Virus record (IMG/VR): IMGVR_UViG_3300025319_000005
Coordinates: 62,001 to 126,000 of that record
Length of the DNA stretch: 64,000 bases
Reading direction: 5' to 3' (one strand)
A model generated the notes under the pieces. It saw nothing but the letters and a program-made list of their open reading frames with translations, was not told the origin of the DNA and made no database searches. How positions within the stretch are numbered: position 1 is the stretch's first letter; every line of letters begins with the position of its first letter. The position numbers and the translations under genes were made by a program. Below are positions 414 through 31,576 of the stretch, piece by piece.

Positions 414-467
414 GAGATATTTTGTTTTTTGGTTATGATGTACTATACAATATTTAATTCTTTGGTG

Positions 468-704
468 TTACAAGGCAGTTATTAAAAATTTAGCTATGGC
501 TTCCAATTCTTCTGCATGAATTAAAATCGAGCCATTACCTTCTGCTTTATCTACTTCCAAGCCAGTAGAACTTAAATGTCCTATTCGACTTCGTTGTCCA
601 TCAATTGTTCTGAATATCCAGAAGTTTCCAACACCATCATCAATAAATTCAAGTTTATGATTTTTGAATACAGGGTTTTCTATTATTTTGGTTATTGTTT
701 TCAT
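468..704 (-). CDS. hypothetical protein
   Basis: Array orientation; stop lies in TGTAAC box. Confidence 0.75.
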   Translation of the reverse strand: MKTITKIIENPVFKNHKLEFIDDGVGNFWIFRTIDGQRSRIGHLSSTGLEVDKAEGNGSILIHAEELEAIAKFLITAL

Positions 705-707
705 GGC

Positions 708-893
708 TTATTTTCTTTCGTTGATTACCTGATAAATTAAATCCTCAACCACAAGACTCCAATTTGCTGTTTCATCCTGGTTTTGAGCTGCCGGATACCT
801 TTTTAATACTTCTTGAATTTCCGCGTCAGTCAGTTCTTTTTTTAATGAATCGGCGATTGTTTCGACATCTAAGTCAATTATTTCGTTTTCCAT
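708..893 (-). CDS. small acidic hypothetical protein
   Basis: Tightly packed operon. Confidence 0.7.
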   Translation of the reverse strand: MENEIIDLDVETIADSLKKELTDAEIQEVLKRYPAAQNQDETANWSLVVEDLIYQVINERK

Positions 894-897
894 GTTG

Positions 898-1116
898 TTA
901 AGGTATTGAAATTATAACTTTTGCTTCAGGGAGAAACTGAGGCGTTACTTCAACTTTGGTTGTGTAAAATTCAGCATCATCAGGAGCAAGTCCTTGATGG
1001 TCAGCAACATCCTGCAACCCTCCTGCAATGTTGTTAGTAATTGTTTTTATATCTTCATCAGATGTGATTTTATCTGAAAAGGTAAGTGTTACTAAAAATG
1101 TGTGTGTCTTACTCAT
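898..1116 (-). CDS. hypothetical protein
   Basis: Motif upstream. Confidence 0.75.
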   Translation of the reverse strand: MSKTHTFLVTLTFSDKITSDEDIKTITNNIAGGLQDVADHQGLAPDDAEFYTTKVEVTPQFLPEAKVIISIP

Positions 1117-1175
1117 GGCGTTATGTTTTGTTTACAATGTACTATACAAGAAATAATTGAATGGTGTTACAAATA

Positions 1176-1373
1176 TTATTCGACTTGTAAAATCCTATCA
1201 AGAATCATTCTCTCAACATTCCCATTCTTTATTTTGTTCGCCCACATACCGGCAATTGCTATAAACTCATCCAATGTATCGGCTTCATCAATTTCTTCTG
1301 TTATTTGTTCTAAATCATCTCCCTCTAAGGTGATGGATTTTTTGTATTCTGATTTCAATTTGTCTAATGTCAT
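1176..1373 (-). CDS. small acidic hypothetical protein
   Basis: Array orientation. Confidence 0.7.
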   Translation of the reverse strand: MTLDKLKSEYKKSITLEGDDLEQITEEIDEADTLDEFIAIAGMWANKIKNGNVERMILDRILQVE

Positions 1374-1378
1374 AGCGT

Positions 1379-1555
1379 TTAGTTTTTTACGTTAATTTCA
1401 GTCATTAATATAAAGTCTTCAAGTTCAGCTCCGTCAAGTGATTTACCACCGTCAGCATAAAATGAAGCAAGCATCATTTCACTTAACTCTTTGAGTTTTG
1501 TTGCAATTTCAACGGCTGTTCCACTTCCTGTTATTTTAATTTCTAATTCTTCCAT
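1379..1555 (-). CDS. hypothetical protein (58 aa, not in ORF track)
   Basis: MEELEIKITGSG...; motif upstream at 1576. Confidence 0.7.
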   Translation of the reverse strand: MEELEIKITGSGTAVEIATKLKELSEMMLASFYADGGKSLDGAELEDFILMTEINVKN

Positions 1556-1629
1556 GATATTTTGTTTTTGTTTACAATGTACTATACAAGAAATAATTGA
1601 ATGGTGTTACAGATACGTGAATATATTTG

Positions 1630-2442
1630 TTACGCTTCCACCGCAATTTTACTGTTTTCTATTCGGGCGTTTTTCATTTCCTCCCTGTTTTGTGGGAAAA
1701 TATCCCCAAGTTCCTCAACAGTTAAAGTTTTAAATCCTTTAAAACGTTCAAGAAATTTTTTATTGATTGAAATGTTTTGTTCAAATTCAATTGGTTTTTT
1801 ATCTTCTTTTGCACTCTTCAATTCATCTTTTGAACAATCGTTTTTGCTTTCAGGATAGTATGCTTTCAAATAAGTAGAAGCATCAACAGGTGTCATACGT
1901 TTTAGTTTTTCAACTGTGCTATCTCCACCGATATTAACAAAGCAGTATTTTGGATTTTTAAGTGTAAAATCCATAATTAACACGCCATCATTATTATCTC
2001 CCTTATCAAAAGAACTACTATATATCAATTCGTTCTCGTCTATATGTTCTTCATTTAAAAGACTTAAATGGTCAATGCCAATACGACAATATTTACCCAA
2101 CTCAAAATCAAACATATTTTGCATATAATTTTTAAACCATTCGATTACATCATTTGGATTTTTTATGCTATCACATTTTTTGTGTAGTAAATTATTATAA
2201 CCATAGGTATCTTCGTGAAAATCTTTAACGGCGAATAAGACTTGAGAAGCCACTAAAGCAAAAGAGCGACCGTATAACCATTGGTGATGAAAAGCAACTA
2301 TAATGGTATTTTCTTCACCATACATTTGTTTCCATTTTTTGTATATTTCCTGGTTTGCTACATAACCGGTAATATCCTCTCTCCATTCCTTTTTGGAATC
2401 AATTTTTATTCTTTTTGCCCATGTTTTGCCAATATTTGGCAT
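1630..2442 (-). CDS. hypothetical protein
   Basis: 270-aa ORF, motif upstream. Confidence 0.75.
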   Translation of the reverse strand: MPNIGKTWAKRIKIDSKKEWREDITGYVANQEIYKKWKQMYGEENTIIVAFHHQWLYGRSFALVASQVLFAVKDFHEDTYGYNNLLHKKCDSIKNPNDVIEWFKNYMQNMFDFELGKYCRIGIDHLSLLNEEHIDENELIYSSSFDKGDNNDGVLIMDFTLKNPKYCFVNIGGDSTVEKLKRMTPVDASTYLKAYYPESKNDCSKDELKSAKEDKKPIEFEQNISINKKFLERFKGFKTLTVEELGDIFPQNREEMKNARIENSKIAVEA

Positions 2443-2592
2443 CTGGATATAAATTTGGCTGCGTTGTCCGATAATTTTAACGACCTTTTGGGTTCGCCCT
2501 CGTTTTAATTAATACTTATTTATAATGTACTATACAAGAAATAATTTGATTGTGTTACAACTTCGTTGGGTTACACCACAAATAATATGTTT

Positions 2593-2892
2593 TTATTTCA
2601 CCAGTTCTCCCTCGCCGTGTTTTCCGGTTAATATTTCTGTGTGGATTTTACTGCAGAATGCAAGAATATCTCCCTGTGGATAATCTCCGCTACTATAAGG
2701 GCAAGTTATTCTAAGAAACAATTTTGACTCCAGCCGGCTGATGAATTTATGTATTGTTCCGGATTTTACAATATTGATTTGATTATCTAAGAAAAACTTA
2801 AAGTGTGTTGAATACTCAACATCTTCGTTTATCCTGTACCACTGTTTTTCTTTTGATTTTTCTCCCATGATTTTTATTTTTAAATATGACAA
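2593..2892 (-). CDS. hypothetical protein
   Basis: Array orientation; start uncertain. Confidence 0.6.
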   Translation of the reverse strand: MSYLKIKIMGEKSKEKQWYRINEDVEYSTHFKFFLDNQINIVKSGTIHKFISRLESKLFLRITCPYSSGDYPQGDILAFCSKIHTEILTGKHGEGELVK

Positions 2893-3641
2893 TCTAAAAT
2901 TGTTATTTGAAAATTCCTATCTTCTGTTTTGTTTAAGTTTAAAAAATAGTTATACTTTTCGATAAGAAATTTCTCATTAATGTTTTCATCTCCCTCATAA
3001 TATGTTTCTTCATCTCCGTTTTCATCTTCAATGATAATATTACAAATCATTCTTTTTACAGCATCTTCTTTCGACATATTTTCATTCCAACTCTTTTGTA
3101 TTGCCTTGAATTTGTTTATTATATCTTGTGCTGAAATATCTTCAGAAATTAGCATTTCACTTTGTCCATCTAATTCCAAATGCGAACACGCTTCTATTAA
3201 TTCCATTTCGCTTATTTTAACGTATTCTTGTACGTTATCTCGATATTTTTCTGCTACCTTTTCATCTTTTAAGTTAAGAGCTTTTTTCAAAAGAGCCTTT
3301 AATTCTTCTTCGCTTTTACAGGTTGGCAATATATTTTTCCAACGACCACCTACCTCACACCAATCATACATCGAATCGCTGTTATAGCTATTTCCATATT
3401 CTCCATATTTTAAATCGAGATGTGAGTATTCTCCCTCCATAAACTCGGCTAATGTTGGATATGTTTTTTCTATTTCAGGAACTTCTTTTATTGTGTTCTT
3501 ATATAGCTTTTTTGCTTGTTTTGCAGTATATTCAACTTCAAATGTTATTTCTGCTCCATCGTCTTCGGTTGCATCGCAATTATGTTTTGCCATTATGGAA
3601 GATTCTTCGCTTTCGTGGATTAATAAAACTGAGAAGTGCAT
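2880..3641 (-). CDS. phage hypothetical protein (MHFSVL...YDWCEVGGRW...ILDCHI)
   Basis: DW-x-x-GGRW and C-terminal DCH pattern typical of a recurrent phage family. Confidence 0.75.
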   Translation of the reverse strand: MHFSVLLIHESEESSIMAKHNCDATEDDGAEITFEVEYTAKQAKKLYKNTIKEVPEIEKTYPTLAEFMEGEYSHLDLKYGEYGNSYNSDSMYDWCEVGGRWKNILPTCKSEEELKALLKKALNLKDEKVAEKYRDNVQEYVKISEMELIEACSHLELDGQSEMLISEDISAQDIINKFKAIQKSWNENMSKEDAVKRMICNIIIEDENGDEETYYEGDENINEKFLIEKYNYFLNLNKTEDRNFQITILDCHI

Positions 3642-3705
3642 AGGATATAATTTTAGTTTGTGTTATAATGTACTATACCAAGAAAAATTGAGCTACGTTA
3701 CAAAA

Positions 3706-4038
3706 TCAATCATCATTTTCAACTTCTTCTTCACCTGTTTCCCATTCTTTTTCTGTGATGATATATCCAAAACGATTAACATAATGAAATCCTGCAGAAA
3801 TAATAAGTTTGCCATCTACATCTAAAATAGTCCAAACACGTTTTTTGGTTTTTTCATCTTGTGCCATTTTAAGGATATATGCTTCTTCCTCTCTATAAGT
3901 TTCATACATTGTTCCACCAAAAGAACAAACATCTTCATCTTTAATTAAAATGTTGGTTTCAGCTCTAATAATATGATTTATTTGAGGCTTATACTCTTTG
4001 TAAAAAACTTCGTCTTTTATTTTCTTTATCTTTTTCAT
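3706..4038 (-). CDS. hypothetical protein
   Basis: Start reassigned downstream of motif at 4058. Confidence 0.7.
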   Translation of the reverse strand: MKKIKKIKDEVFYKEYKPQINHIIRAETNILIKDEDVCSFGGTMYETYREEEAYILKMAQDEKTKKRVWTILDVDGKLIISAGFHYVNRFGYIITEKEWETGEEEVENDD

Positions 4039-4103
4039 GATTTTGTAATTTTTTATTATTGCACTATACAAAAAATTAAATTCCTGTGTTACAAAAAGAA
4101 ACT

Positions 4104-4439
4104 TCACACTCTATCTTGCAGATTTTGGATTAGTTCTTCTAAAATAAACTGCTCCTTATATGGCATTTCAGAATCAACGTTCTTAGCTTCTTTTTTGATT
4201 TCTTTACAAACTTGAGATGCAATTTTTGCTACAACTTCCTTAAATTCGGGATACCTTTCAAGACCAATTAAGGGTTTGACTTTATAGTAGTTATCATTAA
4301 CATATTTAAGGTCATCTTCATAACTGATAGAAACAATCGCTTTCATGTAGGGACTATATGCTAAATTGCCGACTTTGATTTTTGAATAATCATCTTTTTC
4401 AATCTTGTATTTGACGTTATTATAAGTTGCTGTTTCCAT
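4104..4439 (-). CDS. hypothetical protein
   Basis: Motif upstream. Confidence 0.75.
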   Translation of the reverse strand: METATYNNVKYKIEKDDYSKIKVGNLAYSPYMKAIVSISYEDDLKYVNDNYYKVKPLIGLERYPEFKEVVAKIASQVCKEIKKEAKNVDSEMPYKEQFILEELIQNLQDRV

Positions 4440-4494
4440 TTTGTTTTTGGTTTATAATGTACTATACCAATTTTAATTTAATCGCGTTACACTT

Positions 4495-4689
4495 TTAAAT
4501 ATGTTTCTCCGCATTTTCTCTATTCTTGAAATAAACAGTATCCATTGTTCCTGCAAAAGGGTTTTGTTCTTTTATAGTAAATGCTTTATCTCCAGCTTCA
4601 ATTGAAATTCCTGTGTCTTTAAATAAAAACAAGCCTGCTTCATCTTTCCCGATGGTTACTTCCTTAACTTTTTCTCCTGTGATTTTCAT
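4495..4689 (-). CDS. hypothetical protein
   Basis: Motif upstream. Confidence 0.65.
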   Translation of the reverse strand: MKITGEKVKEVTIGKDEAGLFLFKDTGISIEAGDKAFTIKEQNPFAGTMDTVYFKNRENAEKHI

Positions 4690-4857
4690 ACTGTTTAATT
4701 AAATTATGTTTATATTTTTTCATGTTATATTGGTTGTTGGTTTGTGATGTGATATTTTGTTTGTTATAATGTACTATACAAATTTTAATTCTTTTGTGTT
4801 ACAAAGAAGGCGGATGTGGCGTCACAGGCTGGTTTCAGGCGATTTTTTGATTTATTA

Positions 4858-4939
4858 GATATACGTAAAATCCAATTCAATTTTTGTCACAAACTTAATT
4901 CTTTTTGTGACAGAATTTCAGATTTATGTTTCGTATATC
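4858..4939. repeat. Nested palindromic element copy 1
   Basis: GATATACG..TGTCAC-N16-GTGACA..CGTATATC. Confidence 0.95.
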
Positions 4940-5071
4940 CAAATAAAAATTAAATCCTACTTTAGGAGCCCTGGGAAATTCTGAAGCTCCGGTGCTTCAG
5001 AATCAGGATTTTACGCAAACAAAAAGCCCAGGAATTTTCCCGGGCTTCGTGTGAAATGTAAAAATATATCT

Positions 5072-5458
5072 TTAATCAATGCACAAATATCCTTTAAGAT
5101 TTACTGCTGGACAAAACATTAGCAACTCATCAATTGCTGTAACATCGCCACTTGCACATTGCTCTTTAATGAGTTCTAAACATTCGTCAATTAATAACTG
5201 CTTGCGTTTCTTTTGCTCTTCCTGTACTTCTGCGATTGCGTTTTTCACAAGGATACAATCGAAATCAGAGGATTTTACTTCTGGATTTGTTTTTCCTATA
5301 TTTGAAATAATTTCACCGTCAATAGTAATTGTAGCAATTACTCTTGCATTTTCAGAGTTCGGGTTGGTATCGGGATAACAGTCAATTGAAATTTCTCCTG
5401 TTTCTTCATTAGTATAATCTGTTATTACCTCTGCAAAAATTTGGATTTTGTTTTTCAT
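5072..5458 (-). CDS. hypothetical protein
   Basis: ATG overlaps upstream stop. Confidence 0.7.
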   Translation of the reverse strand: MKNKIQIFAEVITDYTNEETGEISIDCYPDTNPNSENARVIATITIDGEIISNIGKTNPEVKSSDFDCILVKNAIAEVQEEQKKRKQLLIDECLELIKEQCASGDVTAIDELLMFCPAVNLKGYLCID

Positions 5459-5778
5459 TATATTTGTTTTGGGTTTATAGTAAATTTCCAATGCAACAAT
5501 TGTTTCTTTCCAACCTCATAGTAAATTTCCAGTATAGCAATTGCTTCTTTCCAACCTCCTTTATATTTGTGTTGTTTTATACCTTGCTCAACAAATTTTT
5601 CAAGTATATTTGATGACTGTTCTAAAAGAAGTGGTGTTTCTGCAACAATAACTTCCCACGTAAATGCTTTTTTCCCTGCTCTAAAACTAAACTTCTCCCC
5701 ATTAAGCGTTTCATAAACATGAATTTCTTTTGGACCGGGGTTTAATACTTCTTTAAGTGTGAGAGTTAGTTTTGCCAT
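5458..5778 (-). CDS. hypothetical protein
   Basis: Motif upstream. Confidence 0.75.
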   Translation of the reverse strand: MAKLTLTLKEVLNPGPKEIHVYETLNGEKFSFRAGKKAFTWEVIVAETPLLLEQSSNILEKFVEQGIKQHKYKGGWKEAIAILEIYYEVGKKQLLHWKFTINPKQI

Positions 5779-5828
5779 GATGTTTCGTTTTGGTTATAAT
5801 GTACTATACAAGAAATAATTGGATTGCG

Positions 5829-6029
5829 TTACACCTCTTCGTTTTCTTGTATATTTATATCATCTGCATCAATGCCAGAGCTTAAAATTTGTGCGCCTAA
5901 ACAACTCGGTTCATTCTGCAGAGCTAAATTAATTAGGTCAATTGCAGTTAGAGCATCTGCTACCATGTTTCCATGAATTCTAGGTATGTCTACTTGTATT
6001 GTCAGGTTTTTGATTGTGATTGTTTTCAT
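5829..6029 (-). CDS. hypothetical protein
   Basis: Motif upstream; stop in TGTAAC. Confidence 0.7.
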   Translation of the reverse strand: MKTITIKNLTIQVDIPRIHGNMVADALTAIDLINLALQNEPSCLGAQILSSGIDADDINIQENEEV

Positions 6030-6089
6030 AAGCTATGTTTTTTTGGTTTATAATGCACTATACAAGATTTAATTTAATGGCGTTACAAC

Positions 6090-6530
6090 TTATTGAGAAA
6101 TCAAAGTTTGTCTGTAAGAGTTTGATATTTCATTACTCCAATGATAGGGTTCTACACATTCCTTAAAGTATTGTTCTGGAGTTAAATCTCTTGTATAAAC
6201 ATATTTAAAGAAATTTTCTTTTATAAGTTCTTTATAGCGAACATCTCTACTCTCTTTAGTTGGAAAATTTTGATAAATTCTACCGACTTTAGGAGAAATA
6301 TAACTTAACTCAAATGGAGTTTCAAAGTTTTTAATATTCATTACAAAATCAATTCCATAAGACCATTCATCTTTGGTATCAATAACGGTAAAATCCCTTT
6401 TCAACCCTTTTAAATCATTCCTGGATTTTCCTTCTATAAACAAATGCACAATAGAAATACACTCCATTCTTTTAGCTGAAAGCTCCATCGCATATTTCTC
6501 AGCATCAAGATATTTTTTAAAAGTTTTCAT
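6090..6530 (-). CDS. hypothetical protein
   Basis: Motif upstream. Confidence 0.75.
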   Translation of the reverse strand: MKTFKKYLDAEKYAMELSAKRMECISIVHLFIEGKSRNDLKGLKRDFTVIDTKDEWSYGIDFVMNIKNFETPFELSYISPKVGRIYQNFPTKESRDVRYKELIKENFFKYVYTRDLTPEQYFKECVEPYHWSNEISNSYRQTLISQ

Positions 6531-6590
6531 TTGTTTGTGTTTTGGTTATAATGTACTATACAAATTTTAATTTAAGGGCGTTACAATTTT

Positions 6591-7208
6591 TCAGTTTTTT
6601 TCTATCTCTTTCAACATTTCAACTTCTTCTGTTTCAAGTTGAGCGTATTCGTTTAATTTATTTGTGTGTTCAGTTGCAAGTTTTTCGATTACCTTTTCTT
6701 TATCAATTTTCAATTTTTTTATACAAGTGAGTACTTCTATTTGAACTTCACGTTTGTTTTTGGAAATATTTACTTTATCACCATGAACAGCACCCCAAAC
6801 ATTTTTACCAACTTCTTCTTGAATTGATATTTCACAACATACTATTCCCAATATGTTTAAGTCAAACAAATTAATTTTATATACCCCTATTTTAGAATTA
6901 TGCTTTTCAAAGTAAGCAAATCTAGGTGTAATCTTTGTAATTACGTCCGACCATACTTTATGAGAATAAACACTGGAGAACCAAAACACATCACCAACTT
7001 TAACATCAGATTTTATTCGTGTATCAACAAAATAGGATTTGTCAGCTTGAATGTAAATTCCCATTAGTTTGGGATGTTTAACTGTATAAACATTTTCAAA
7101 AGTGTGAATTTCTACTTCTACCTCCGTTCCTTTCTCAATTGGACAGACAGCGTGCGACCATTTAGGACATTTTAGGCTCTTTGCTAATATTAGTTTCTTC
7201 GTTTCCAT
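6591..7208 (-). CDS. hypothetical protein
   Basis: Motif upstream. Confidence 0.75.
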   Translation of the reverse strand: METKKLILAKSLKCPKWSHAVCPIEKGTEVEVEIHTFENVYTVKHPKLMGIYIQADKSYFVDTRIKSDVKVGDVFWFSSVYSHKVWSDVITKITPRFAYFEKHNSKIGVYKINLFDLNILGIVCCEISIQEEVGKNVWGAVHGDKVNISKNKREVQIEVLTCIKKLKIDKEKVIEKLATEHTNKLNEYAQLETEEVEMLKEIEKN

Positions 7209-7509
7209 AGAAAATTCTGTTTTTATTGGTTTGTAATGTACTATACCAAAAATTAAATTGCCGTGTTACACTTTTAAATTGATATTCTCAGCTATTAAAA
7301 ATAGGCTTTCGTCTATTAAAAATCAGTTTTTAACTATTTTATTAAATTGTTAATAATATCCAGCCTACTTTTACAGTGAATGTCAAATATGATACAGATC
7401 ACCAAAATTAGTGATAAACATCACTTAGTTTTAAGAAACAGATAAATAACTCTATCGTTTAATTTTATATAAACTGAACCGTCAGAAACGGCAACTTAAA
7501 AAACAGATT

Positions 7510-7827
7510 ATGGAAACAAATTATGTCAACGTTGAAAATTTGGATTTAAAAAACTTAACATCAAAAGAGCTTTTTCTATACACTTTAAATAAAATTGGCA
7601 GACCTTCACTAGCAAGGGATATGGCTGAATATTTGGAAAGAAATAAATTAATTTCAATGAAAAAAGAGGAAATATTAATCAGATTATATACTGGTGCGAC
7701 ACAATTAAACAAATCAAAAGTAGTTAGTAGGATGCCCTATGATGGCAGAATGTATATGTATGCTATCATAAAACAACAACAATTTGTTAATTTGACAGCT
7801 CAGAATAAATTTAAAATGGTTGCATAA
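7510..7827 (+). CDS. putative winged-helix DNA-binding protein, paralog 1
   Basis: Shares DL-x-x-LT-x-x-E-x-FL...IG-x-P...RDM...Y with next two ORFs; basic; fold is inference. Confidence 0.6.
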   Translation: METNYVNVENLDLKNLTSKELFLYTLNKIGRPSLARDMAEYLERNKLISMKKEEILIRLYTGATQLNKSKVVSRMPYDGRMYMYAIIKQQQFVNLTAQNKFKMVA

Positions 7828-7975
7828 CAAATAAATGTGTGAATTATATAACACAAAAATAAAATTGTGTAATAGCTACATGTTCATAAATTGCAACCTT
7901 TGTTGCGTTAAAAAGTATAAACAATAAAGATTTTAACTGTACCGACAGAATCGGCAATTTAAAAACAAAAACAAA

Positions 7976-8377: not shown

Positions 8378-8398
8378 CACACGTTTATTTTTGTATTA

Positions 8399-8445: not shown

Positions 8446-8452
8446 GGGAATA

Positions 8453-23901: not shown

Positions 23902-24059
23902 AGCGTTATAATTTGTTTTTAATCAGCCTACCACTTGTTGTCTTTAGTGCCTCGACATCTTTTGACCAATTTTATTGGCTCGATTTCTCTGCTGATAATG
24001 TACTATACAAAATTAAATCGGATTGCGTTACAAAAAGAATATAATAGGGAGAGTTTATT

Positions 24060-24881
24060 TTAGATAAGTGTTTTAAGATACAAAACAAAAGCGTTCATAT
24101 CTACCTCATTTGCGTTTTCAAATTTATCATTTATTGAATGGCAAAGACTCCATGTATAACAAAAACCTCTTGTTATTACATTGTTCATACACACATCATT
24201 TAAAGAACCAATACAAATGCTTGGAAGTCCATTTTTTTCAAAAGTATTTGAATCACTTGGCGGTATTCTAACCCTACGGATTTCGGGCTTATCAATCATA
24301 TTTGACATTCTATAACCCATCCAATAATTTTGCCCATTTGCCGTGAGTTCTAACACAAATATTTTATTCACATTTCCATATTTGTTTTCTAATATTTGTT
24401 TAGCTATTTTTGTTGCACCCGATGTTGTTAAACTCACTCTTTCTTCCGAATCGTTAAAACATATTACTACATTGTTTGCTGGTTTTTCTTTTGATAATTG
24501 AATACATAAATCCAAGAGATTACATACACTCGCACTGTTATCTTGACATGATTCACTATTTATATTTGCAACGTCATGGTGTGCCGTAAATATAGTAGTT
24601 ATTTCTTTATTATGTCCTTCAATCTCAACTACAATATTAACTTCGGCAGGCAATCCTTCAACAAAGTCAGGAACGTCCAAAATCGGTTGATACATACTAA
24701 CAATAAATTTTATATCATTAATTTCAAGTTGGTGCATAATATACTGCACTCTATTTGTAATTGGGTTTAAGTTATTTGTGAAAGCATTAAAGTCTGCATT
24801 GAACGCACATAACTCACGGAGCATTTCATACCCATTCTTAATTTTTATCGGCTTTTCTATTTTCTCTGTATCTGTGTCCAT
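24060..24881 (-). CDS. M28-family Zn metallopeptidase-like protein
   Basis: TAHHD, QDNSASV, DSEE, SDS and late CHS-x-x-D motifs. Confidence 0.85.
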   Translation of the reverse strand: MDTDTEKIEKPIKIKNGYEMLRELCAFNADFNAFTNNLNPITNRVQYIMHQLEINDIKFIVSMYQPILDVPDFVEGLPAEVNIVVEIEGHNKEITTIFTAHHDVANINSESCQDNSASVCNLLDLCIQLSKEKPANNVVICFNDSEERVSLTTSGATKIAKQILENKYGNVNKIFVLELTANGQNYWMGYRMSNMIDKPEIRRVRIPPSDSNTFEKNGLPSICIGSLNDVCMNNVITRGFCYTWSLCHSINDKFENANEVDMNAFVLYLKTLI

Positions 24882-25011
24882 AATGTACTATACGAAATAT
24901 AATTTATATTTGTTACAAAGTTAATATTAAATAATTGCAAATGAAACAGTTAAAACAAAACGAGAACTACTGGAGAAGCTCCGTCGAGCTGGTTCTAAAT
25001 TATTTATTCGA

Positions 25012-25093
25012 GATATACGTAAAATCCAACTCAATTTGTGTCACGAATTAAATTATTTTCGTGACAGGATTTCGCTTTTATATTTCGTATATC
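25012..25093. repeat. Nested palindromic element copy 8
   Basis: Same architecture. Confidence 0.95.
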
Positions 25094-25257
25094 CTTATCT
25101 GGTAAAAATCCACGAGCTGGACGCCTGGCCAGGAATTTCCTTCAGCTCCTCCGGGGTAAACTATATTTTGGCACCAGTTTCAATCTGCTGTCGAATTATA
25201 GAAAACAAAAAACCCCTGCATTTCTGCAAGGGCTTCTCGTACCAACCAACCAATAAT

Positions 25258-25488
25258 TTACATTTTCGCCTTCTCAATGGCTTTTACAATATCTTTTATT
25301 CCAATGTTTTGAGTTTTGCTTGCATATAAATAACTTTGAATGTATGCTTCCGAGTAACCTGTTTTTACCATTGCTTTAGCTTTTAATTCTAAAGGTGGTA
25401 TTTCATACATTTGGGCACGTTGCTTATCTCTTAAAATTTGCAAGTTGCGTTCAGCTTCTTTGATTTCACTTTTTAATGGATTTTTCAT
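25258..25488 (-). CDS. hypothetical protein
   Basis: ORF track. Confidence 0.65.
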   Translation of the reverse strand: MKNPLKSEIKEAERNLQILRDKQRAQMYEIPPLELKAKAMVKTGYSEAYIQSYLYASKTQNIGIKDIVKAIEKAKM

Positions 25489-25757
25489 AGTTACATTTGT
25501 TTTTCAGTACTTACAATAACGGAATTTCCATCTTCTTTACAAAGTAGTGTTCCTTCAATTTGAACATTAACACAACCTTTTTCAGATAGTTGTTCTAATT
25601 CAAAAATTAGTTTGTTTATGTTTATCGTTTCCATTGTGTTTAATTGTTGGTTATAATGTACTATACCAAAAATAAAATTACTGCGTTACAATAATATATC
25701 CCGTGCATAAAACTGGGACTCCAGCCGGCGAGCTCTGGTGTAAAATCCTAAATTTAT

Positions 25758-25839
25758 AATATACACTTAATCAAACTCAATTTGTGTCACAAAATAAATT
25801 CTTTTCGTGACAAACTATCACTTTTAGTTTGCGTATATC
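25758..25839. repeat. Nested palindromic element copy 9
   Basis: Same architecture, AATATACA variant. Confidence 0.9.
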
Positions 25840-26009
25840 TCCCTAAGGTAAAATACACCACCGGCCAGCCTGCTGAGCCCAGGAATTTTTCAGGAATAGG
25901 CATCAGGATTTCATTTTGGCTTTAAGTGGGTCAAAAACATGAGTTATGGCCAAAAACAAAAAACCCCTGCATTTCTGCAAGGGCTTTCTGAACCGAACCA
26001 ACCAATGTA

Positions 26010-26369
26010 TTATATTTCTCTTCGTATTTCTCTGCGTGATTCTAATATTTTTGAATTGGGATACCAAAAACTTTGCTTGTGTATTTGAGAGTACCCTTTC
26101 TCCCCCGTGAAATAATCAACCCAAAATGCGAACAGTTCTATTTCGCCATTCTTGTCCTCTGTCAGCAACAATGTCCTTGATAACTCTTTTAACTGTGCAA
26201 ATCTTTTCATTGCCCAATCTCCATAACTGAATCGGTCTTTCCAAAAATGATATGCGACCTCTCTCCCTCATTGTTCATCAACAGCACGATGTAGGATTTT
26301 ACGTTCATTTTCCTCATTTTTGAAAACATAGGGAAAGTTAGCTAATATGTAGGGAGTGCTTAGTATCAT
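26010..26369 (-). pseudogene. hypothetical gene interrupted by one in-frame TGA (26268-26270)
   Basis: MILSTPY...DEQ*GREVAYHFW...MKRFAQ in one frame. Confidence 0.5.
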
Positions 26370-26519
26370 TATATTTTTTGAGATTTCGGGTGTTTTATTT
26401 TTTTGTTTTTCAACAAAGTCTGATAAGCCTTACCATACTTATCGTTTGAATACTTACCACGACTAACTTTTTCTTTTTCTGCTTTCATAATGTACTATAC
26501 AAGTTTTAATTCTTCTGCG

Positions 26520-27104
26520 TTACATTTGTAAAACACTTCTAATTTCAGCTTCTTTTGTTTTTGGAAAAATCCAACCTGCACCACAAGTTAAACGAAAATT
26601 GAAACGACCGCCCAATGCTTTTAAAGTATCTTTGATAGGTTTAGTATCTCCAATTATTGCAATTGCCTTTTCTGAATAATCAACTACTTTAATTTTACCA
26701 TCATTTTCAATTGGTTCAACTTTTACATTTGTTGGTTTTTTCGGTAACTCTGTTTTAGGAATGTATTTAAAAGGTTTATCCCATTCTCCAATACTTAAAC
26801 TTGTGTAAAACTTTGGAATAGCACCATAATCTCCATCAATAGAAACTATTTCATTGTTTCCTTCCATTATATCAACAATCTTTTGCAATGCTTCTGCTAC
26901 TTCAGTATTGTCTTTATAGTGGTCTTTGATGTAGTAATGATTAACCCCTTCATAATCTTTTTCTGTCAGCTTAATATCAGTTTCCAAAATAACAACGTTA
27001 ATACTCGAATAGTGTCGTCTTGTAATACTGAATTTCCAATTAGGAAATGCTAATTTAATTGCTTTCCTTTTTTCTGCGATTTGTTCCGTTGAAATATATG
27101 GCAT
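26520..27104 (-). CDS. LPD29-like domain protein with C-terminal DYSEKA...GGRFN...GWIF domain
   Basis: AFPNWKFSI..YSSINV N-terminus resembles polyvalent-protein-associated domain; recalled, not searched. Confidence 0.55.
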   Translation of the reverse strand: MPYISTEQIAEKRKAIKLAFPNWKFSITRRHYSSINVVILETDIKLTEKDYEGVNHYYIKDHYKDNTEVAEALQKIVDIMEGNNEIVSIDGDYGAIPKFYTSLSIGEWDKPFKYIPKTELPKKPTNVKVEPIENDGKIKVVDYSEKAIAIIGDTKPIKDTLKALGGRFNFRLTCGAGWIFPKTKEAEIRSVLQM

Positions 27105-27248
27105 AACGATTGGTTTATTTGGTTAATGTACTATACGATATTAAATCATATCGCGTTACAACTTCGTTGACTATACCACAAATATTCTATGCAGGAAAAC
27201 TGGGACTCCAGCCGGCGTGAGGCTCTGGCGTAAAATCCTGAAGTATTT

Positions 27249-27331
27249 GATATACGATTAATCAAAGTCAATTTGTGTCACAAATTTAAATTCTTTTTGT
27301 GACAGGAAATCAATTGGATTTTACGTATATC
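27249..27331. repeat. Nested palindromic element copy 10
   Basis: Right arm is reverse complement of the usual left arm. Confidence 0.95.
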
Positions 27332-27554
27332 TTTTCAAAGTAAAATCCACCGCCGGCCAGCCGCTGAGCCCAGGGATTTTTCCTCCGGGGGAGAGAATCC
27401 CAAAAACAAAAACCCTCACATTTCTGCGAGGGCTTTCCAAACCAACCAATTGGTATAGGGCAATACATTACTGCAAGACTACAAACCCCTATCTTTGAGT
27501 GAAAACATCTACACGTAGCTATGCAAATTCATGTTTTCATACTATCTTAAATAT

Positions 27555-27737
27555 CTATTTGTGCTTTTTCTTTTCACGCTGTTCTTTTTCATACTTTTGA
27601 ACTCTTATTTTTTCTTCACGAGTTAGCGGAATTTTACCTGCCGTTTGTTTATATAATAAATCACTCAAGTAAGGAAAATCAGCTTGTCTTTGCAGTTTAC
27701 TTTTGCCGTCATGTATTCTATAACTGTATTCTCTCAT
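27555..27737 (-). CDS. hypothetical protein
   Basis: Operon. Confidence 0.6.
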   Translation of the reverse strand: MREYSYRIHDGKSKLQRQADFPYLSDLLYKQTAGKIPLTREEKIRVQKYEKEQREKKKHK

Positions 27738-27741
27738 TATT

Positions 27742-27945
27742 TTAAATTTTATTTATTAAATCAAAAATGTGAACTAAATTTCCTTTGTGCTTTCCACTTA
27801 CGATTTCATAAAACGCATCGTTGTACCTTTTAGCTTTTTCGGTTAGGATTTTACCCTCACTCCAAAATTTGATTTCTTTTGCTTCTGCTAATGTCTGAAT
27901 TTCAGATTTCACATAAGGATTTTTACCGCAGTGGATACAACTCAT
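27742..27945 (-). CDS. hypothetical protein
   Basis: Motif upstream. Confidence 0.65.
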   Translation of the reverse strand: MSCIHCGKNPYVKSEIQTLAEAKEIKFWSEGKILTEKAKRYNDAFYEIVSGKHKGNLVHIFDLINKI

Positions 27946-28333
27946 AGTTTTAAATTTAATTGGTTATATTGTACTATACAAGTTTTAATCCTCTTGCGTT
28001 ACAGATTTATGCTCTTTATATCTTTTATTTGCTTCTAATACCTCAATAATAGTTTCTTCTACATCAGCGTAAGTGAGTTTTGTTATTTTAGCGTAAAATT
28101 CAAAAGGTGTCCGTAAGTAAGCCAATGCAGTTACCAATCTCGTAGCCGAACCGAAGCAACCAATATTTATGTGTTACAAATTCGCTTTCTGATAGGATTT
28201 TACTTCAAAGTCAGTAGCAACACGAATGTCATCATCGTCATTTATTAAATGTGATATCGAACCGTATTGACAAATAACACCTTGCCAAACTATAATGGCG
28301 AACGAATAAAAAGAGTTTTTGTTGTTCATAGTT

Positions 28334-28567
28334 TTAATTTTTAGAATCAATGTAAATTACTATTGCCATATAAGGAATAAGTATTCCAAACATTAAGTAC
28401 CAATTCGGCTTAGATAAAATTCCAATCAACATAGGAATGAAATAATAAATAGCAAGTCTGAATATCGTTTTTAATACCATAATATGTGATAGATTGGGAT
28501 ACCATAATCGTATCCGATTATTATTATAATTTTTTTTCATGTTTTTGATTGTTTTAGTTATTACCAA
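28334..28567 (-). CDS. small membrane protein
   Basis: Two hydrophobic segments; start uncertain. Confidence 0.55.
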   Translation of the reverse strand: MVITKTIKNMKKNYNNNRIRLWYPNLSHIMVLKTIFRLAIYYFIPMLIGILSKPNWYLMFGILIPYMAIVIYIDSKN

Positions 28568-28798
28568 TACTTTACTACAAAATGCGTTATAACATAAGTG
28601 ACTGAAATAATACCAAGTAATCCAATTGCCATAACAATAACTATTGGTAAATATATTTGGATTTTACAGACAATTCTCACTATTCTCATTTGAATGTTTG
28701 TAAGTTTCTTTCCTGATTTGTAATTAAATAAATTCATGGAGTTGGTTGTTGGTTACAATGTACTATACGAAATATTAAATTCCTATGTTACAACTATT

Positions 28799-29149
28799 CT
28801 ATTTTGCAGTACCTTCATATTCATAAATTCTTGTTTCTCCTTCTATCTTCACAAGTCGAAATATACAAATAGCAGAGTCAAAATTTTCTTTTTCGCAGTC
28901 AATCATTACACAAGCATTGGTATTATCCCCATCTTTTTCAACGTGAGTTATAACACCCTTTCTTCCTTGTGTTGATTGTGGCTGTTCCCTTTTATCATTC
29001 AAATCTAAGAAACTATTTGCGACAAACAAATCATTACAAATTTCAATTGCTGTTTTATAATTTTTGCCAATTGGAGTAGTTAGTCCAAATTGTTCTTTAA
29101 CTACTTTCCAATTGCTGATTTTTGGTCTTACTGATGTTATTGATTGCAT
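28799..29149 (-). CDS. hypothetical protein
   Basis: Motif upstream. Confidence 0.7.
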   Translation of the reverse strand: MQSITSVRPKISNWKVVKEQFGLTTPIGKNYKTAIEICNDLFVANSFLDLNDKREQPQSTQGRKGVITHVEKDGDNTNACVMIDCEKENFDSAICIFRLVKIEGETRIYEYEGTAK

Positions 29150-29269
29150 ATCTTTATAGTTGTTGGTTATTGTACTATACGAAAAAGAATTGAATCATGT
29201 TACAAGGGAGAACACACCGTGCGAGAAAACTGGAGTACCAGATCGCCGAGGGTGAGCCTGAGAATTTAA

Positions 29270-29351
29270 GATATACGCTTAATCAATACCAATTTGTGTC
29301 ACTAATTAAATTATTTTCGTGACAGGATTTTAGGTTTAAATTTCGTATATT
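29270..29351. repeat. Nested palindromic element copy 11
   Basis: Same architecture. Confidence 0.9.
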
Positions 29352-29475
29352 AATATGCGATGCACTCCGGGGAGAGTCGCCTCTGAGGTGGAGCTATTTT
29401 TTTCGGATTTGTAGAAAACAAAAAAGGCAACCCGATTTTCGGATTGCCTTTTGTTTTGCATAAGGGAGAGAGTGA

Positions 29476-30063
29476 TTAATCGCGGTATTCAATTTCGATC
29501 ACAATTTCTTCTCTATCCTCGCCATCAATGTTTATTACTTGTTTGTTCACTTTTACCGTTCCTGCTAAGTTCTTCAATAAAAACGAACGAAACTGTGAAG
29601 ATTTTAAGGATTTTTCAATTACCTTTTTTGCAATGGTCTTTGCTCTTGACTTAACAACTTTGTAAGTACACGCTTCCAACACTTCTTTTTTCTCACTTTT
29701 AGCGAACAAGTAAAGTTCTTCTGTATTCATGTTGTATTTCACACTTCCGTTGTCCTCATTTAAAACAACATAAGCATTAGTTTGACCTAAAGAACGATTT
29801 TCGTCAGGTTTAATAAGTGATTGCTTTTTTTCAGCCATAGCCAAATCCCAATCAATTTTTGTGTATTTTTCAGATGCAACATAAGGAATACCATCGGCAA
29901 TCAACTCCAAATCTGATTTTTTGGCATTTTCAATTTTTGCACCAACATTCAACAGTCGTCTGCTCAATTCGCCCTCTTTGCTACGATATTTTAGTGAAAC
30001 AAATCCACAGCCTCTGTATTTCATGAAGGCATCTAACAATTCATTAAAAATTCCATTTTCCAT
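29476..30063 (-). CDS. hypothetical protein, first gene of leftward array
   Basis: Own promoter and terminator, between palindrome copies 11 and 12. Confidence 0.8.
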   Translation of the reverse strand: MENGIFNELLDAFMKYRGCGFVSLKYRSKEGELSRRLLNVGAKIENAKKSDLELIADGIPYVASEKYTKIDWDLAMAEKKQSLIKPDENRSLGQTNAYVVLNEDNGSVKYNMNTEELYLFAKSEKKEVLEACTYKVVKSRAKTIAKKVIEKSLKSSQFRSFLLKNLAGTVKVNKQVINIDGEDREEIVIEIEYRD

Positions 30064-30181
30064 GTTTTCTAAGTTTAGTTGGTTTCTATATTGTACTATA
30101 CGAAAAAAAATATATCCATGTTACAAAACTGAAAAAGTTTTTATCGACCGAAAAATCCTGGAAATCTGTGCTTTTCTTTAT

Positions 30182-30264
30182 AATATACGTAAAATCCAAC
30201 TCATTTCCTGTCACTAATTTTAATTATTTTCGTGACAGAATATTAGATTTATGTTTCGTATATC
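30182..30264. repeat. Nested palindromic element copy 12 (at divergence point)
   Basis: Same architecture, between divergent promoters. Confidence 0.9.
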
Positions 30265-30492
30265 TACAAGTCAAAAAAAACGTGATCTGGGACTCTGTGG
30301 ACCCCTGAAAAAACTCCTGAGCCGACATCTAAAATCCTTTGAAACGCTTGCTATCATTGAGAATTTTCTTCCAGTCAGGACCTGGATGCCTTCCGTATAA
30401 ATTTTGACTCAAGAACTCAAAACAAGTGGTAAAATCCTCCATTTGTATCCCGAAAATAATTTATTTTTATTTGTTGTATAACTCACTGAAAG

Positions 30493-30528
30493 TGTAACGC
30501 AGTAGTTTATCATTTCGTATAGTACATT
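30493..30528 (+). promoter_or_regulatory. Plus-strand copy of the TGTAAC-N17-CGTATAG motif
   Basis: tgtaac gcagtagtttatcattt cgtatagtacatt upstream of ORF 30546; further + copies at 30916-30951 and 31323-31358. Confidence 0.85.
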
Positions 30529-30545
30529 AACCAATAACAAGTACC

Positions 30546-30872
30546 ATGAATTTATTGAATGTAATTTATTCAAAAAACACCTACAAAAAAGCAATCTGTA
30601 AAGGTTGTAGCAATAAACTAATTGAAGGCAGTACAATTCTTTCGATAGTACGTACACAAGGTCGTTTTACATCGGTCAGCAACTATTGTCAAAAATGTGC
30701 AGAAAAAGAACTGCAGGATGCTTTGAATGAAGTTTTACCATTGGCACAACGAATAATAAAAATCCAAGAAACATTGGATAATGACTTAATAATGGCAAAA
30801 AAGATTGAAGGGATAGCAAAGGAAGCTATGGAAAAATATGATACCACTATGAAAAAATTGGGTAACGAGTAA
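30546..30872 (+). CDS. Zn-finger/coiled-coil protein
   Basis: CKGC...CQKC; + strand motif upstream. Confidence 0.75.
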   Translation: MNLLNVIYSKNTYKKAICKGCSNKLIEGSTILSIVRTQGRFTSVSNYCQKCAEKELQDALNEVLPLAQRIIKIQETLDNDLIMAKKIEGIAKEAMEKYDTTMKKLGNE

Positions 30873-30951
30873 TCAACATACGAAAGTTCATAACTTTAAT
30901 GAAATTTTATAAATCTGTAACATAGTTCTTTTTAAATTTGTATAGCACAAT

Positions 30952-31314
30952 ATGGAAACAAAGACATTAGATAACCTAAAAGACTTACATTCAAAATTGG
31001 AAGTTGTTTTTAAAGCCGAAAATGAAGCTATAAAGACAAAACAAAAAGATGTGTTAAGTGAACAACTTAAATTACAAGTCAATTTAATATATGACTTTGT
31101 AAAAGAAAACAACTTAATACTTGTTGAATTAAACACTGCTTGGGTGGAAAAAAATGAAGCTCGTAGAACTATATATAACCCAAAAACTTTAGAACATAAA
31201 AGTTTTAAAAATTTATCCGATAAAGACTTTGTAAACAAATTCAATAAAGGAAAAAATAATTGTTTATTTGTACATAGCACATTTTGGGGTATGGATTATA
31301 TGTTAATAATGTAG
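30952..31314 (+). CDS. hypothetical protein (likely leaderless)
   Basis: ATG directly follows + strand motif. Confidence 0.75.
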   Translation: METKTLDNLKDLHSKLEVVFKAENEAIKTKQKDVLSEQLKLQVNLIYDFVKENNLILVELNTAWVEKNEARRTIYNPKTLEHKSFKNLSDKDFVNKFNKGKNNCLFVHSTFWGMDYMLIM

Positions 31315-31576
31315 CTGTATTTTGTAACACCGGAATTTTATATTTTGTATAGTATATTAGAAACAAAAACTTAAAGCCATGATAATTTTATACTACTACT
31401 TTAATCCAAATCAAATAGAATTTCTTAACCTCAAAAACCTAAACACCATGAAACAACAACTCGCAGTAATCGCAAACAATCTTACCAAAATGGAACGTTA
31501 CGAACAAATGGAACGCATCGCGCAGAATCTACTTGATATGGAAATCGAGTAGAATAGTTTTAAACATTGTTAGAGG

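What the first reader, a model, noticed from the sequence alone, without database searches (positions are those of the whole stretch)
437..31358. ~50 copies of one 36-bp motif give almost every small gene its own promoter: a cassette-like array
Seen: TGTAAC-N17-BGTATAGTRCATT lies upstream of nearly every ORF or short operon for 31 kb and I did not see it after 31.4 kb. Neighbouring copies can be identical over ~45 bp (ending at 1171 and 1611). Known analogues are the PeSL promoter cassettes of some T4-type phages and the SPO1 host-takeover module. Inference: the motif acts as both promoter and homology unit for gaining, losing and reordering single-gene cassettes (likely anti-defence or host-takeover genes), nested within the larger palindrome-bounded blocks to give two levels of modularity.
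Basis: partly seen in the sequence, partly recalled or inferred. Interest (0 to 1): 0.85.

Follow-up and report, generated by a model that had tools for sequence, protein, structure and literature searches.

The report
Phage sigma-factor promoter array
A half-megabase phage of Bacteroidota puts one ECF-type promoter in front of nearly every small gene across 31 kb, probably read by a sigma factor the phage encodes, and these promoter-plus-gene units are what is gained and lost between related phages.

Summary
The motif occurs 50 times at 437-31358 (about 0.2 expected), always pointing the same way as the genes, and never later in the window.

It is a promoter of the ECF (group 4 sigma) type.
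- It has two fixed boxes, TGTAAC and GTATAGTAC, 18 nt apart.
- The start codon is either flush with the motif or 16-23 nt behind it.
- One copy drives a tRNA.
- A Bacteroidota ECF sigma gene carries TGTAAC-N17-CGTAT upstream in 38 of 77 orthologues.

The same phage genome (503 kb, public) encodes an ECF sigma with an extra N-terminal domain. That sigma lies behind a copy of the motif in all four genomes I could check. In IMG/VR, the sigma family and multi-copy motif occur in the same two contigs only.

The PeSL comparison fails on its defining features: there is no sigma-70 consensus and no stem-loop at each promoter. Terminators occur only once per block of several promoters, next to 13 palindromes.

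Cassette-like turnover is real at the level of whole units. Gene adjacency across relatives is kept at 34% of junctions without the motif and at 7% of junctions with it. Whether the motif itself mediates recombination is untested. No transcript data exist.

The parts
437..30125 (-). 47 copies of promoter P1 (36 nt each), with the 1-4 small genes each one heads
   Evidence: Low coordinates of the copies: 437, 1136, 1576, 2524, 3667, 4058, 4456, 4768, 5798, 6052, 6550, 7235, 8831, 9417, 10179, 11126, 11432, 12299, 12665, 12984, 13250, 14125, 14839, 15473, 15735, 16750, 17255, 17778, 18038, 18832, 19498, 20261, 20945, 21213, 21877, 22431, 23061, 23634, 23997, 24882, 25655, 26489, 27125, 27968, 28757, 29169, 30090.
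30493..31358 (+). 3 P1 copies heading the first + strand genes on the other side of the divergence point
   Evidence: copies at 30493, 30916 and 31323. They are followed by ORFs 30546-30872, 30952-31314 and 31379-31552. The divergent arrangement is conserved in L034 and L053.
4858..31764 (.). 13 block-boundary palindromes of 81-84 bp. Each has two outward-facing arms, GTGACA-N19-CGTATAT (motif P2), around an AT-rich centre
   Evidence: 26 paired arms against about 1 expected. Spans: 4858-4939, 10292-10372, 13363-13444, 15840-15921, 18186-18267, 21337-21418, 23174-23255, 25010-25093, 25758-25841, 27249-27331, 29270-29351, 30182-30264, 31681-31764.
5023..29452 (-). 11 strong intrinsic terminators, each about 100 nt upstream of a palindrome in the direction of transcription, closing a block of several P1 units
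   Evidence: Stems at 5048-5023, 10568-10546, 13564-13535, 16088-16059, 18388-18359, 21535-21506, 23394-23375, 25240-25205, 25990-25957, 27437-27408, 29452-29422. Only weak 5-6-pair matches lie between P1 units.
11045..11119 (-). tRNA-Phe(GAA) starting 6 nt after the P1 copy at 11126-11161
   Evidence: A non-coding gene directly behind the motif argues for a transcription signal and against a translation signal.
23424..23497 (-). Second tRNA-Phe(GAA), in the unit headed by P1 at 23634
9455..10214 (-). Conserved anchor unit: P1 (10179-10214), a 62-aa gene with its ATG flush to the motif, then peptide deformylase (9455-10003)
   Evidence: The gene pair and its P1 are conserved in the 518-kb genome and in L051, L053 and L055.
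24060..24917 (-). P1 (24882-24917) with a flush ATG, followed by a 273-aa gene whose homologues in relatives are M28 peptidases
3703..4491 (-). Two single-gene P1 units (P1 4456 with gene 4439-4104; P1 4058 with gene 4038-3706) found only in this genome
   Evidence: The flanking genes 4495-4689 and 2880-3641 are adjacent in the 518-kb genome (L005), L051 and L055. The extra DNA amounts to exactly two P1-headed units.
1126..1611 (-). Two adjacent P1 copies identical over 46 bp (1126-1171, 1566-1611)
   Evidence: The order of these two units is reversed in L051.
7271..8830 (.). The only long stretch of the array without P1. It holds two + strand genes (7510-7827, 7976-8377) paralogous to the - strand gene 8453-8803

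Best explanation
P1 is a promoter class of the ECF (group 4 sigma) type. Its -35 box is TGTAAC, followed by a fixed 17-nt spacer and an extended -10 box, (C/T/G)GTATAGTAC. Host core RNA polymerase most likely reads it with an ECF-family sigma factor that the phage encodes: 368 aa, made of sigma region 2 and region 4 plus a conserved N-terminal beta-rich domain. That sigma gene itself lies behind a P1 copy, so expression would feed back positively. Transcription is inferred to start within a few nucleotides of the motif's 3' end. This would give either leaderless mRNAs (ATG flush with the motif) or mRNAs with a conserved leader of about 20 nt, rich in A and C and lacking a Shine-Dalgarno sequence, as expected in Bacteroidota. 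Each P1 heads 1-4 small, mostly orphan genes. Successive units are not separated by terminators, so about 13 blocks of several promoters each should give nested transcripts ending at one terminator beside a palindrome. In evolution the P1-headed unit is the module gained, lost and moved on a conserved scaffold. Shown by computation: the motif statistics, its geometry, the sigma gene, and the turnover pattern. Inferred: the start site, which sigma reads P1, and when the genes are expressed.
For: Geometry. All 50 copies point the same way as the genes. The ATG is flush with the motif in 8 of 50 copies, and in 17 of 29 in the 518-kb genome, against 0.5% at random positions. It lies 16-23 nt downstream in 28 of 50. 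A tRNA starts 6 nt after one copy. Conserved by function, not by duplication. The downstream genes are unrelated to one another, yet the two boxes are invariant in six genomes while the spacers differ. ECF type. TGTAAC as -35 with a 17-nt spacer is published for B. subtilis SigX and for ECF16 (PMC12153292, PMC8315932). The only genome-collection hit with biological context lies about 43 nt before an ECF sigma gene in Ferruginibacter. TGTAAC-N17-CGTAT is found upstream of 38 of 77 orthologues of that gene, with 37 different spacers. Phage sigma. L008:6963-8066(-), in the same genome, passes the sigma70-ECF model (88.9 bits against a cut-off of 42.9). Its best structural matches are sigma-E, AlgU, SigW and SigH. 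It lies in a P1-headed unit in 4 of 4 genomes. In IMG/VR the sigma family occurs only in the two contigs that carry many P1 copies. The base before GTATAG varies by genome (always C in one, T in others), while the host promoter keeps C, so P1 is not simply the host promoter. Host phylum. Genes outside the array carry TAnnTTTG upstream (8 of 29; p about 1e-4), and the sigma's nearest cellular relatives are all Bacteroidota. Unit turnover.
Against: There are no transcript data. No listed RNA run holds the phage, so the promoter role and start site are inferred. All genomes with P1 belong to one clade, so the co-occurrence of sigma and P1 is not independent evidence. Because almost every gene in that region has a P1, finding the sigma behind one is weak evidence for autoregulation. 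The sigma's nearest cellular relatives have no P1-like motif upstream, so the specificity cannot be inherited by homology. A sigma made only from its own promoter needs something to start it, and I found no host-type promoter in front of the sigma operon. A second two-box motif, the palindrome arms (P2), could be the phage sigma's real target.
Confidence: 0.62

Rival explanations
1. P1 is read by a host ECF sigma of the GFO_1088/PG0214 type, whose own promoter has the same -35 box, -10 box and spacing. Infection stress would release that sigma and fire the array. The phage sigma, made from a P1 unit, would then read a different promoter such as the palindrome arms (P2), giving a two-step cascade.
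For: The host auto-promoter TGTAAC-N17-CGTAT is conserved in 38 of 77 orthologues and matches P1 in both boxes and spacing. This would solve the problem of how expression starts. P2 is also a two-box motif with fixed spacing, in 26 arms. The phage sigma's nearest cellular relatives lack P1-like promoters.
Against: The host promoter keeps C before GTAT, while P1 has T or G there in most copies of four phage genomes. P1 also has a longer invariant -10 box, GTATAGTAC, and lacks the host's T-tract after TGTAAC. The true host species and its sigma repertoire are unknown. The P2 spacer is 3 nt longer than that of P1, which is unfavourable for ECF sigmas (PMC12153292).
Confidence: 0.2
2. One reading: besides being a promoter, the motif is the homology unit at which recombination inserts, deletes and reorders single-gene cassettes, as in T4-type PeSLs, possibly through small circles.
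For: Gene adjacency across relatives is kept at 37 of 109 junctions without P1 and at 9 of 133 with P1 (odds ratio 7, p about 1e-7). In the collinear stretch shared with L051, 12 shared units alternate with 13 units found only in the window and about 13 found only in L051. One extra segment is exactly two P1 units (3703-4491). Two adjacent copies identical over 46 bp head units whose order is reversed in L051.
Against: The same pattern is expected if co-transcribed genes are simply inherited together and indels are tolerated only between genes. The reliably identical sequence per copy is short, about 19 fixed bases in 36, and spacers differ. Neighbouring copies are not generally more alike (p = 0.02 in the window, not significant in L051). 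Orthologous promoters keep their own spacers across genomes, which argues against frequent exchange. No variant or circle-like joints were found in four runs, and all strain copies are 100% identical. The available relatives are too distant (30-80% amino-acid identity) to see chimeric promoters.
Confidence: 0.3
3. P1 is read by a phage-encoded RNA polymerase, or by host polymerase redirected by a non-sigma factor, and its likeness to ECF promoters is coincidental.
For: Huge phages often carry their own polymerases. Only about 100 kb of the 503-kb genome was examined here.
Against: No polymerase subunit was found in the window or the fetched blocks. A two-box layout with a strict 17-nt spacer is the signature of sigma-dependent recognition. 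The motif also recurs in front of a cellular ECF sigma gene family.
Confidence: 0.06
4. The array is integron-like: the palindromes are recombination sites for the Xer-type tyrosine recombinase encoded in the distal part of the array, and blocks are the mobile cassettes.
For: A tyrosine recombinase lies on the array strand (L013:1025-1879). There are 13 conserved palindromes at block boundaries.
Against: The recombinase scores below the integron-integrase cut-off (166 against 265 bits) and matches that model in two separate stretches, and it looks Xer-like. Genes inside blocks have their own promoters, unlike integron cassettes. The palindromes lack the 11-6-11 layout of Xer sites (that layout is my own knowledge).
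Confidence: 0.04

Closest known systems
PeSL (promoter-early stem-loop) cassettes of T4-type phages (Arbiol et al. 2010, PMC2839356; Comeau et al. 2014, PMC4122927)
   Same: About 50 copies of one conserved promoter element per genome. The copies are concentrated in a variable region, sit mostly just upstream of orphan genes, and the element-plus-gene unit differs between related phages.
   Different: PeSLs match the host sigma-70 consensus and each contains a stem-loop terminator. Conservation spans about 100 bp, and circles and chimeric elements were shown by experiment. Here the promoter is ECF-type with no stem-loop at each copy, terminators occur only once per block, and recombination at the motif is not shown.
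Phage-encoded ECF-type sigma of phiEco32 and the Kuravirus phages (Savalia et al. 2008, as cited in PMC7881722)
   Same: A phage supplies its own ECF-family sigma to redirect host core polymerase to phage-specific promoters.
   Different: Those are podophages of about 77 kb infecting Proteobacteria, with few such promoters. Here a 503-kb Bacteroidota phage has at least 66 near-identical promoters, one for roughly every 1.6 genes. Its sigma carries a conserved extra N-terminal domain, and many of the mRNAs would be leaderless.
Autoregulated cellular ECF sigma promoters (B. subtilis SigX: -35 TGTAAC, -10 CGWC, PMC12153292; ECF16: (T/C)GTAAC-N17-CGAA, PMC8315932; the Bacteroidota GFO_1088/PG0214-type family found here)
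   Same: The same -35 hexamer, the same 17-nt spacer and a CGT-type -10 box, with the sigma gene sitting behind its own promoter.
   Different: Cellular regulons are small and controlled by anti-sigma factors. No anti-sigma partner was identified here. The regulon has dozens of promoters in one array, and the -10 box is extended to GTATAGTAC.
SPO1 host-takeover module and the SPO1 gp28 / T4 gp55 sigma cascades
   Same: A cluster of many small genes with many closely spaced strong promoters, and phage sigmas defining temporal classes.
   Different: The SPO1 takeover promoters are host sigma-A early promoters, and its sigmas are not ECF-type. Timing and host-shutoff function are unknown here.

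Membership tests
PeSL cassettes (T4-type phages) | Promoter matches the host sigma-70 early consensus | tested here: not met
   The boxes are TGTAAC and GTATAGTAC. The sigma-70 scan picks P1 copies up only as weak 9-of-12 matches and finds no excess overall (92 against 76 +/- 7, and 63 against 76 +/- 8). The Bacteroidota housekeeping -7 motif is found outside the array, not at P1.
PeSL cassettes (T4-type phages) | A stable stem-loop (terminator or attenuator) inside each element | tested here: not met
   101-nt windows centred on P1 fold more weakly than random windows of the array (mean -10.7 against -13.7 kcal/mol), and none reaches -20. Strong terminators occur once per block.
PeSL cassettes (T4-type phages) | Located upstream of orphan genes in a variable region | tested here: met
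   82 of 85 ORFs have no credible Pfam match and 80 of 85 match no PHROG. Only 18 of 47 units are shared with the closest relative.
PeSL cassettes (T4-type phages) | Indels between close relatives bounded by the elements, chimeric elements, mini-circles | tested here: inconclusive
   Breakpoints concentrate at P1 junctions. The relatives are too distant to see chimeras, and all strain copies are identical with no circle-like joints.
ECF (group 4) sigma-dependent promoter | Two boxes: a -35 box containing AAC and a -10 box of CGT type, separated by a strict spacer of 16-17 nt | tested here: met
   TGTAAC-N17-(C/T/G)GTATAG at invariant spacing in 50 of 50 copies and in six genomes. This matches the published SigX and ECF16 consensus (PMC12153292, PMC8315932).
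ECF (group 4) sigma-dependent promoter | The same motif serves as the auto-promoter of a bona fide ECF sigma gene | tested here: met
   Found in Ferruginibacter and in 38 of 77 metagenomic orthologues, with 37 distinct spacers.
ECF (group 4) sigma-dependent promoter | A cognate ECF sigma is encoded by the same genome, downstream of the motif | tested here: met
   L008:6963-8066(-) scores 88.9 bits on TIGR02937 and has an ECF fold. It lies behind P1 in 4 of 4 genomes.
ECF (group 4) sigma-dependent promoter | Transcription from the motif depends on that sigma | not testable with these tools
   No RNA run holds the phage. This needs in vitro transcription or a reporter assay.
ECF (group 4) sigma-dependent promoter | A partner anti-sigma factor | not tested
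   The co-transcribed upstream gene (168 aa, L008:8104-8607) has no family match. No anti-sigma domain was seen in the scanned ORFs.
Integron | IntI-type integrase, promoterless cassettes each ending in an attC site, one common promoter | tested here: not met
   The recombinase is Xer-like and below the integron-integrase cut-off. Genes carry their own promoters. The palindromes bound blocks of several genes.

The most novel reading that the evidence does not exclude
The phage's promoter class imitates the auto-promoter of a host envelope-stress ECF sigma. Infection itself would then trigger the array through the host sigma, and the phage's own sigma, with its extra N-terminal domain and no anti-sigma partner, would lock expression on. 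Because every orphan gene carries this universal promoter, promoter-tagged units could move among huge phages of the clade and be expressed at once. The 13 palindromes with a second two-box motif would form a further control layer, either a second sigma step or short divergent RNAs.
Probability: 0.15. Interest if true: 0.75.

Novelty: new variant of a known kind. Interest (0 to 1): 0.5.

Why it matters
Huge phages are known almost entirely from metagenomes, and how they programme gene expression is largely unknown. This work gives a concrete, testable transcription programme for a 0.5-Mb Bacteroidota phage clade: a defined promoter, a candidate sigma factor, predicted start sites, and leaderless mRNAs. 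It marks more than 60 orphan genes as one co-regulated set, which is the natural place to screen for host-takeover or anti-defence functions. It shows that gene turnover in these giants proceeds by promoter-headed units. The sigma and promoter pair could also serve as an orthogonal expression tool for Bacteroidota.

Tried and rejected
- Megablast of 32 kb of the window against GenBank phages found nothing.
- Rfam found only the two tRNAs.
- Stop-codon recoding: no sign of it.
- RNA evidence: no listed RNA run holds the stretch.
- Laying contigs of four DNA runs gave no variants. The apparent joints are other copies of the repeats in the same genome.
- Strain copies from six places are 100% identical and carry no structural variants.
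- Paralogy as the source of the repeats is rejected: only one small gene family exists.
- The genome-collection scan gave only singletons, so the motif is not a bulk host promoter or a prophage feature.
- A single-protein scan of viral contigs with the Ferruginibacter sigma found nothing.
- The phage sigma's nearest cellular relatives have no P1-like motif upstream, so specificity could not be transferred by homology.
- The GC-rich flanks of the palindromes have no consensus RNA structure.
- Neighbouring promoters are only weakly or inconsistently more similar.
- The integron-like reading is not supported.
- DNA could not be fetched for two sigma homologues because the sample files were too large.
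- The sigma's N-terminal domain got no structural assignment from the whole-protein search.

Full report
**The observation**

The stated pattern matches 34 times exactly and 50 times with up to three mismatches, against 0.00 and 0.18 expected from shuffles. Forty-seven copies lie on the - strand between 437 and 30125. Three lie on the + strand at 30493, 30916 and 31323. None lies beyond 31358.

The strand switch coincides with the point where gene direction switches. Conservation continues past the stated pattern into a leader, ATAACCAAAA, that has no Shine-Dalgarno sequence.

**Source**

The window is 100% identical to NCBI record CACVIJ010000001.1 (GCA_902731165.1, 503,412 bp) and to part of a 212-kb IMG/VR contig. 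So this is a half-megabase huge phage from groundwater and sediment. The same clone is present in more than 20 samples.

The array continues to the left of the window. At least 66 copies lie in the parts of the genome I could read. There is no stop-codon recoding.

**Why it is a promoter**

- Every copy points the same way as the next gene.
- The first ORF-opening ATG is flush with the motif in 8 of 50 copies, against 0.5% at random positions, and lies 16-23 nt downstream in 28 of 50.
- In a second genome, a 518.8-kb IMG/VR contig, the ATG is flush in 17 of 29 copies.
- One copy is followed after 6 nt by a tRNA-Phe gene. This rules out a purely translational signal.
- The genes behind the copies are unrelated to each other, so function keeps the motif, not duplication.
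- The two boxes, TGTAAC and GTATAGTAC, are invariant at fixed spacing in six different genomes while the spacers vary.

The start site is inferred to lie at or within a few nucleotides of the motif's 3' end. That would make the flush-ATG class leaderless. No transcript data exist.

**Which polymerase**

The layout is that of ECF sigma promoters. TGTAAC is the published -35 box of B. subtilis SigX, and (T/C)GTAAC-N17-CGAA is the ECF16 consensus. ECF promoters tolerate spacer changes poorly (PMC12153292, PMC8315932).

A scan of 185,579 species genomes gave only singletons, as chance predicts. However, in two Ferruginibacter assemblies the motif lies about 43 nt upstream of a gene that is an ECF sigma factor. 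I estimate about 0.01-0.02 such placements by chance. Among 77 metagenomic orthologues of that gene with enough upstream DNA, 38 carry TGTAAC-N17-CGTAT with at most two mismatches, and these have 37 different spacers. That is the signature of an autoregulated ECF promoter.

The phage genome itself encodes an ECF-type sigma, L008:6963-8066(-), 368 aa.
- It scores 88.9 bits on TIGR02937 against a cut-off of 42.9, and its best-scoring model is SigW-like.
- Its predicted fold matches sigma-E, AlgU, SigW and SigH.
- It has a conserved beta-rich N-terminal domain of about 100 residues with no family assignment.
- It is the second gene of a unit headed by a P1 copy.
- The same holds in the three other genomes where I could see a homologue: L105, L106 and L193.
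- In IMG/VR the sigma family occurs in exactly the two contigs that carry many P1 copies.
- A more distant sigma (28% identity, L104) has no P1 nearby.

Two caveats apply. All P1 genomes form one clade, so this co-occurrence is not independent evidence. The sigma's nearest cellular relatives are Bacteroidota ECF sigmas placed behind a glycosyltransferase gene, and they have no P1-like motif.

**Host**

Three lines point to Bacteroidota. The leaders lack a Shine-Dalgarno sequence. The sigma's cellular relatives are all Bacteroidota. The Bacteroidota housekeeping -7 motif TAnnTTTG (identified from my own knowledge) lies upstream of 8 of 29 genes outside the array, against 1.6 expected (p about 1e-4). 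The genome therefore appears to use at least two promoter classes.

**Architecture**

Successive P1 units are packed tightly, without terminators between them. Eleven strong intrinsic terminators lie on the array strand. Each sits about 100 nt before one of 13 palindromes of 81-84 bp.

Each palindrome has two outward-facing arms, GTGACA-N19-CGTATAT. There are 26 paired arms against about 1 expected, and the arms are conserved in relatives. A block is therefore a palindrome, then several P1 units, then one terminator. Transcripts from the promoters within a block should be nested and end at the same place.

The arms look like a second two-box promoter whose spacer is 3 nt longer than that of P1. 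Their role is unknown. Their GC-rich flanks have no shared RNA structure.

**The cassette idea**

PeSLs are defined by a sigma-70 consensus promoter plus a stem-loop in each element (PMC2839356). Neither feature is met here.

- In comparisons among five genomes, gene adjacency is kept at 37 of 109 junctions without P1 and at only 9 of 133 with P1. The odds ratio is 7 and p is about 1e-7. The counts are not fully independent.
- Against the closest relative, L051 (60-80% amino-acid identity), 12 window units have counterparts in the same order. They alternate with 13 units found only in the window and about 13 found only in L051.
- Genes 4495-4689 and 2880-3641 are adjacent in three other genomes but are separated here by exactly two P1 units.

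This fits promoter-guided exchange. It equally fits indels being tolerated only between transcription units. Neighbouring promoters are not generally more alike, orthologous promoters keep their own spacers, and no variants or circles were detected.

**Gene content**

Of 85 array ORFs, only a peptide deformylase, an M28 peptidase and an LPD29 domain have credible Pfam matches. Five ORFs match PHROGs, and only one of those families has a named function. Weak anti-defence hints (Tad4, Lar) appear in relatives' arrays.

**Verdict**

This is a real and striking feature. I read it as the regulon of a phage-encoded ECF sigma in a huge Bacteroidota phage. Phage sigmas with cognate promoters, and promoter-per-orphan-gene arrays, are both known. 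This is a new variant of that kind, with unit-wise gene turnover. It is not a PeSL system. I found no paper describing this motif or an ECF regulon in huge phages, though the library searched is incomplete.

Noticed in passing
window 41628-42749 (-): A 373-aa protein with a strong match to the thiol-activated cytolysin family (PF01289, E = 3e-35), encoded by a phage. It has a host-type TAnnTTTG motif upstream.
   Followed up: no
window 4858-31764 (13 sites): Palindromes of 81-84 bp with two outward arms, GTGACA-N19-CGTATAT. Forward and reverse arms each have their own conserved spacer type. They are flanked by GC-rich stretches of 55-110 nt that fall into a few unrelated sub-families with no shared structure. 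The palindromes are conserved in the 518-kb genome and in L051, L053 and L055.
   Followed up: partly
window 15951-16060: About ten tandem copies of a 10-nt unit (GGGATTTTTC) between a terminator and a palindrome. The related word GGATTTTAC occurs 34 times in the array and 8 times in the rest of the window, which suggests a protein-binding site.
   Followed up: no
window 11045-11119 (-) and 23424-23497 (-): Two tRNA-Phe(GAA) genes sit inside the array, the first only 6 nt behind a P1 copy.
   Followed up: partly
window 7271-8830: The only long stretch of the array without P1. It holds two + strand genes paralogous to the adjacent - strand gene 8453-8803, and the homologue is also inverted in L051, L053 and L055.
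   Followed up: no
window P1 copies at 2524, 15473, 16750, 17255, 21213, 21877, 27125: A sub-family of P1 copies has an extra GTAAC-like box and the word CAACGAAGT just upstream. These may be tandem -35 boxes or remnants of promoter fusion.
   Followed up: no
L008:6963-8066 (-), residues 11-100: The phage ECF sigma has a conserved beta-rich N-terminal domain (pLDDT about 80-88) joined by a disordered linker. It has no family or fold assignment and is shared by about 11 homologues.
   Followed up: partly
L013:1025-1879 (-) and L013:1992-2819 (-): A Xer-type tyrosine recombinase and an N6/N4 DNA methylase lie in the distal part of the array of the same genome.
   Followed up: partly
L105:9206-9616 (-): An HNH/NUMOD4 homing endonuclease gene is inserted inside the sigma operon of a related phage, followed by an extra P1 copy.
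   Followed up: no
window 50086-51642 (-) and 54690-56426 (-): Two large paralogous proteins (518 and 578 aa, 30% identity) with no family assignment.
   Followed up: no
window 32000-64000: Genes outside the array often carry TAnnTTTG 16-64 nt before the ATG (8 of 29). This region also encodes a resolvase, a LAGLIDADG endonuclease, a ParB-like protein and a nucleoside deoxyribosyltransferase.
   Followed up: partly
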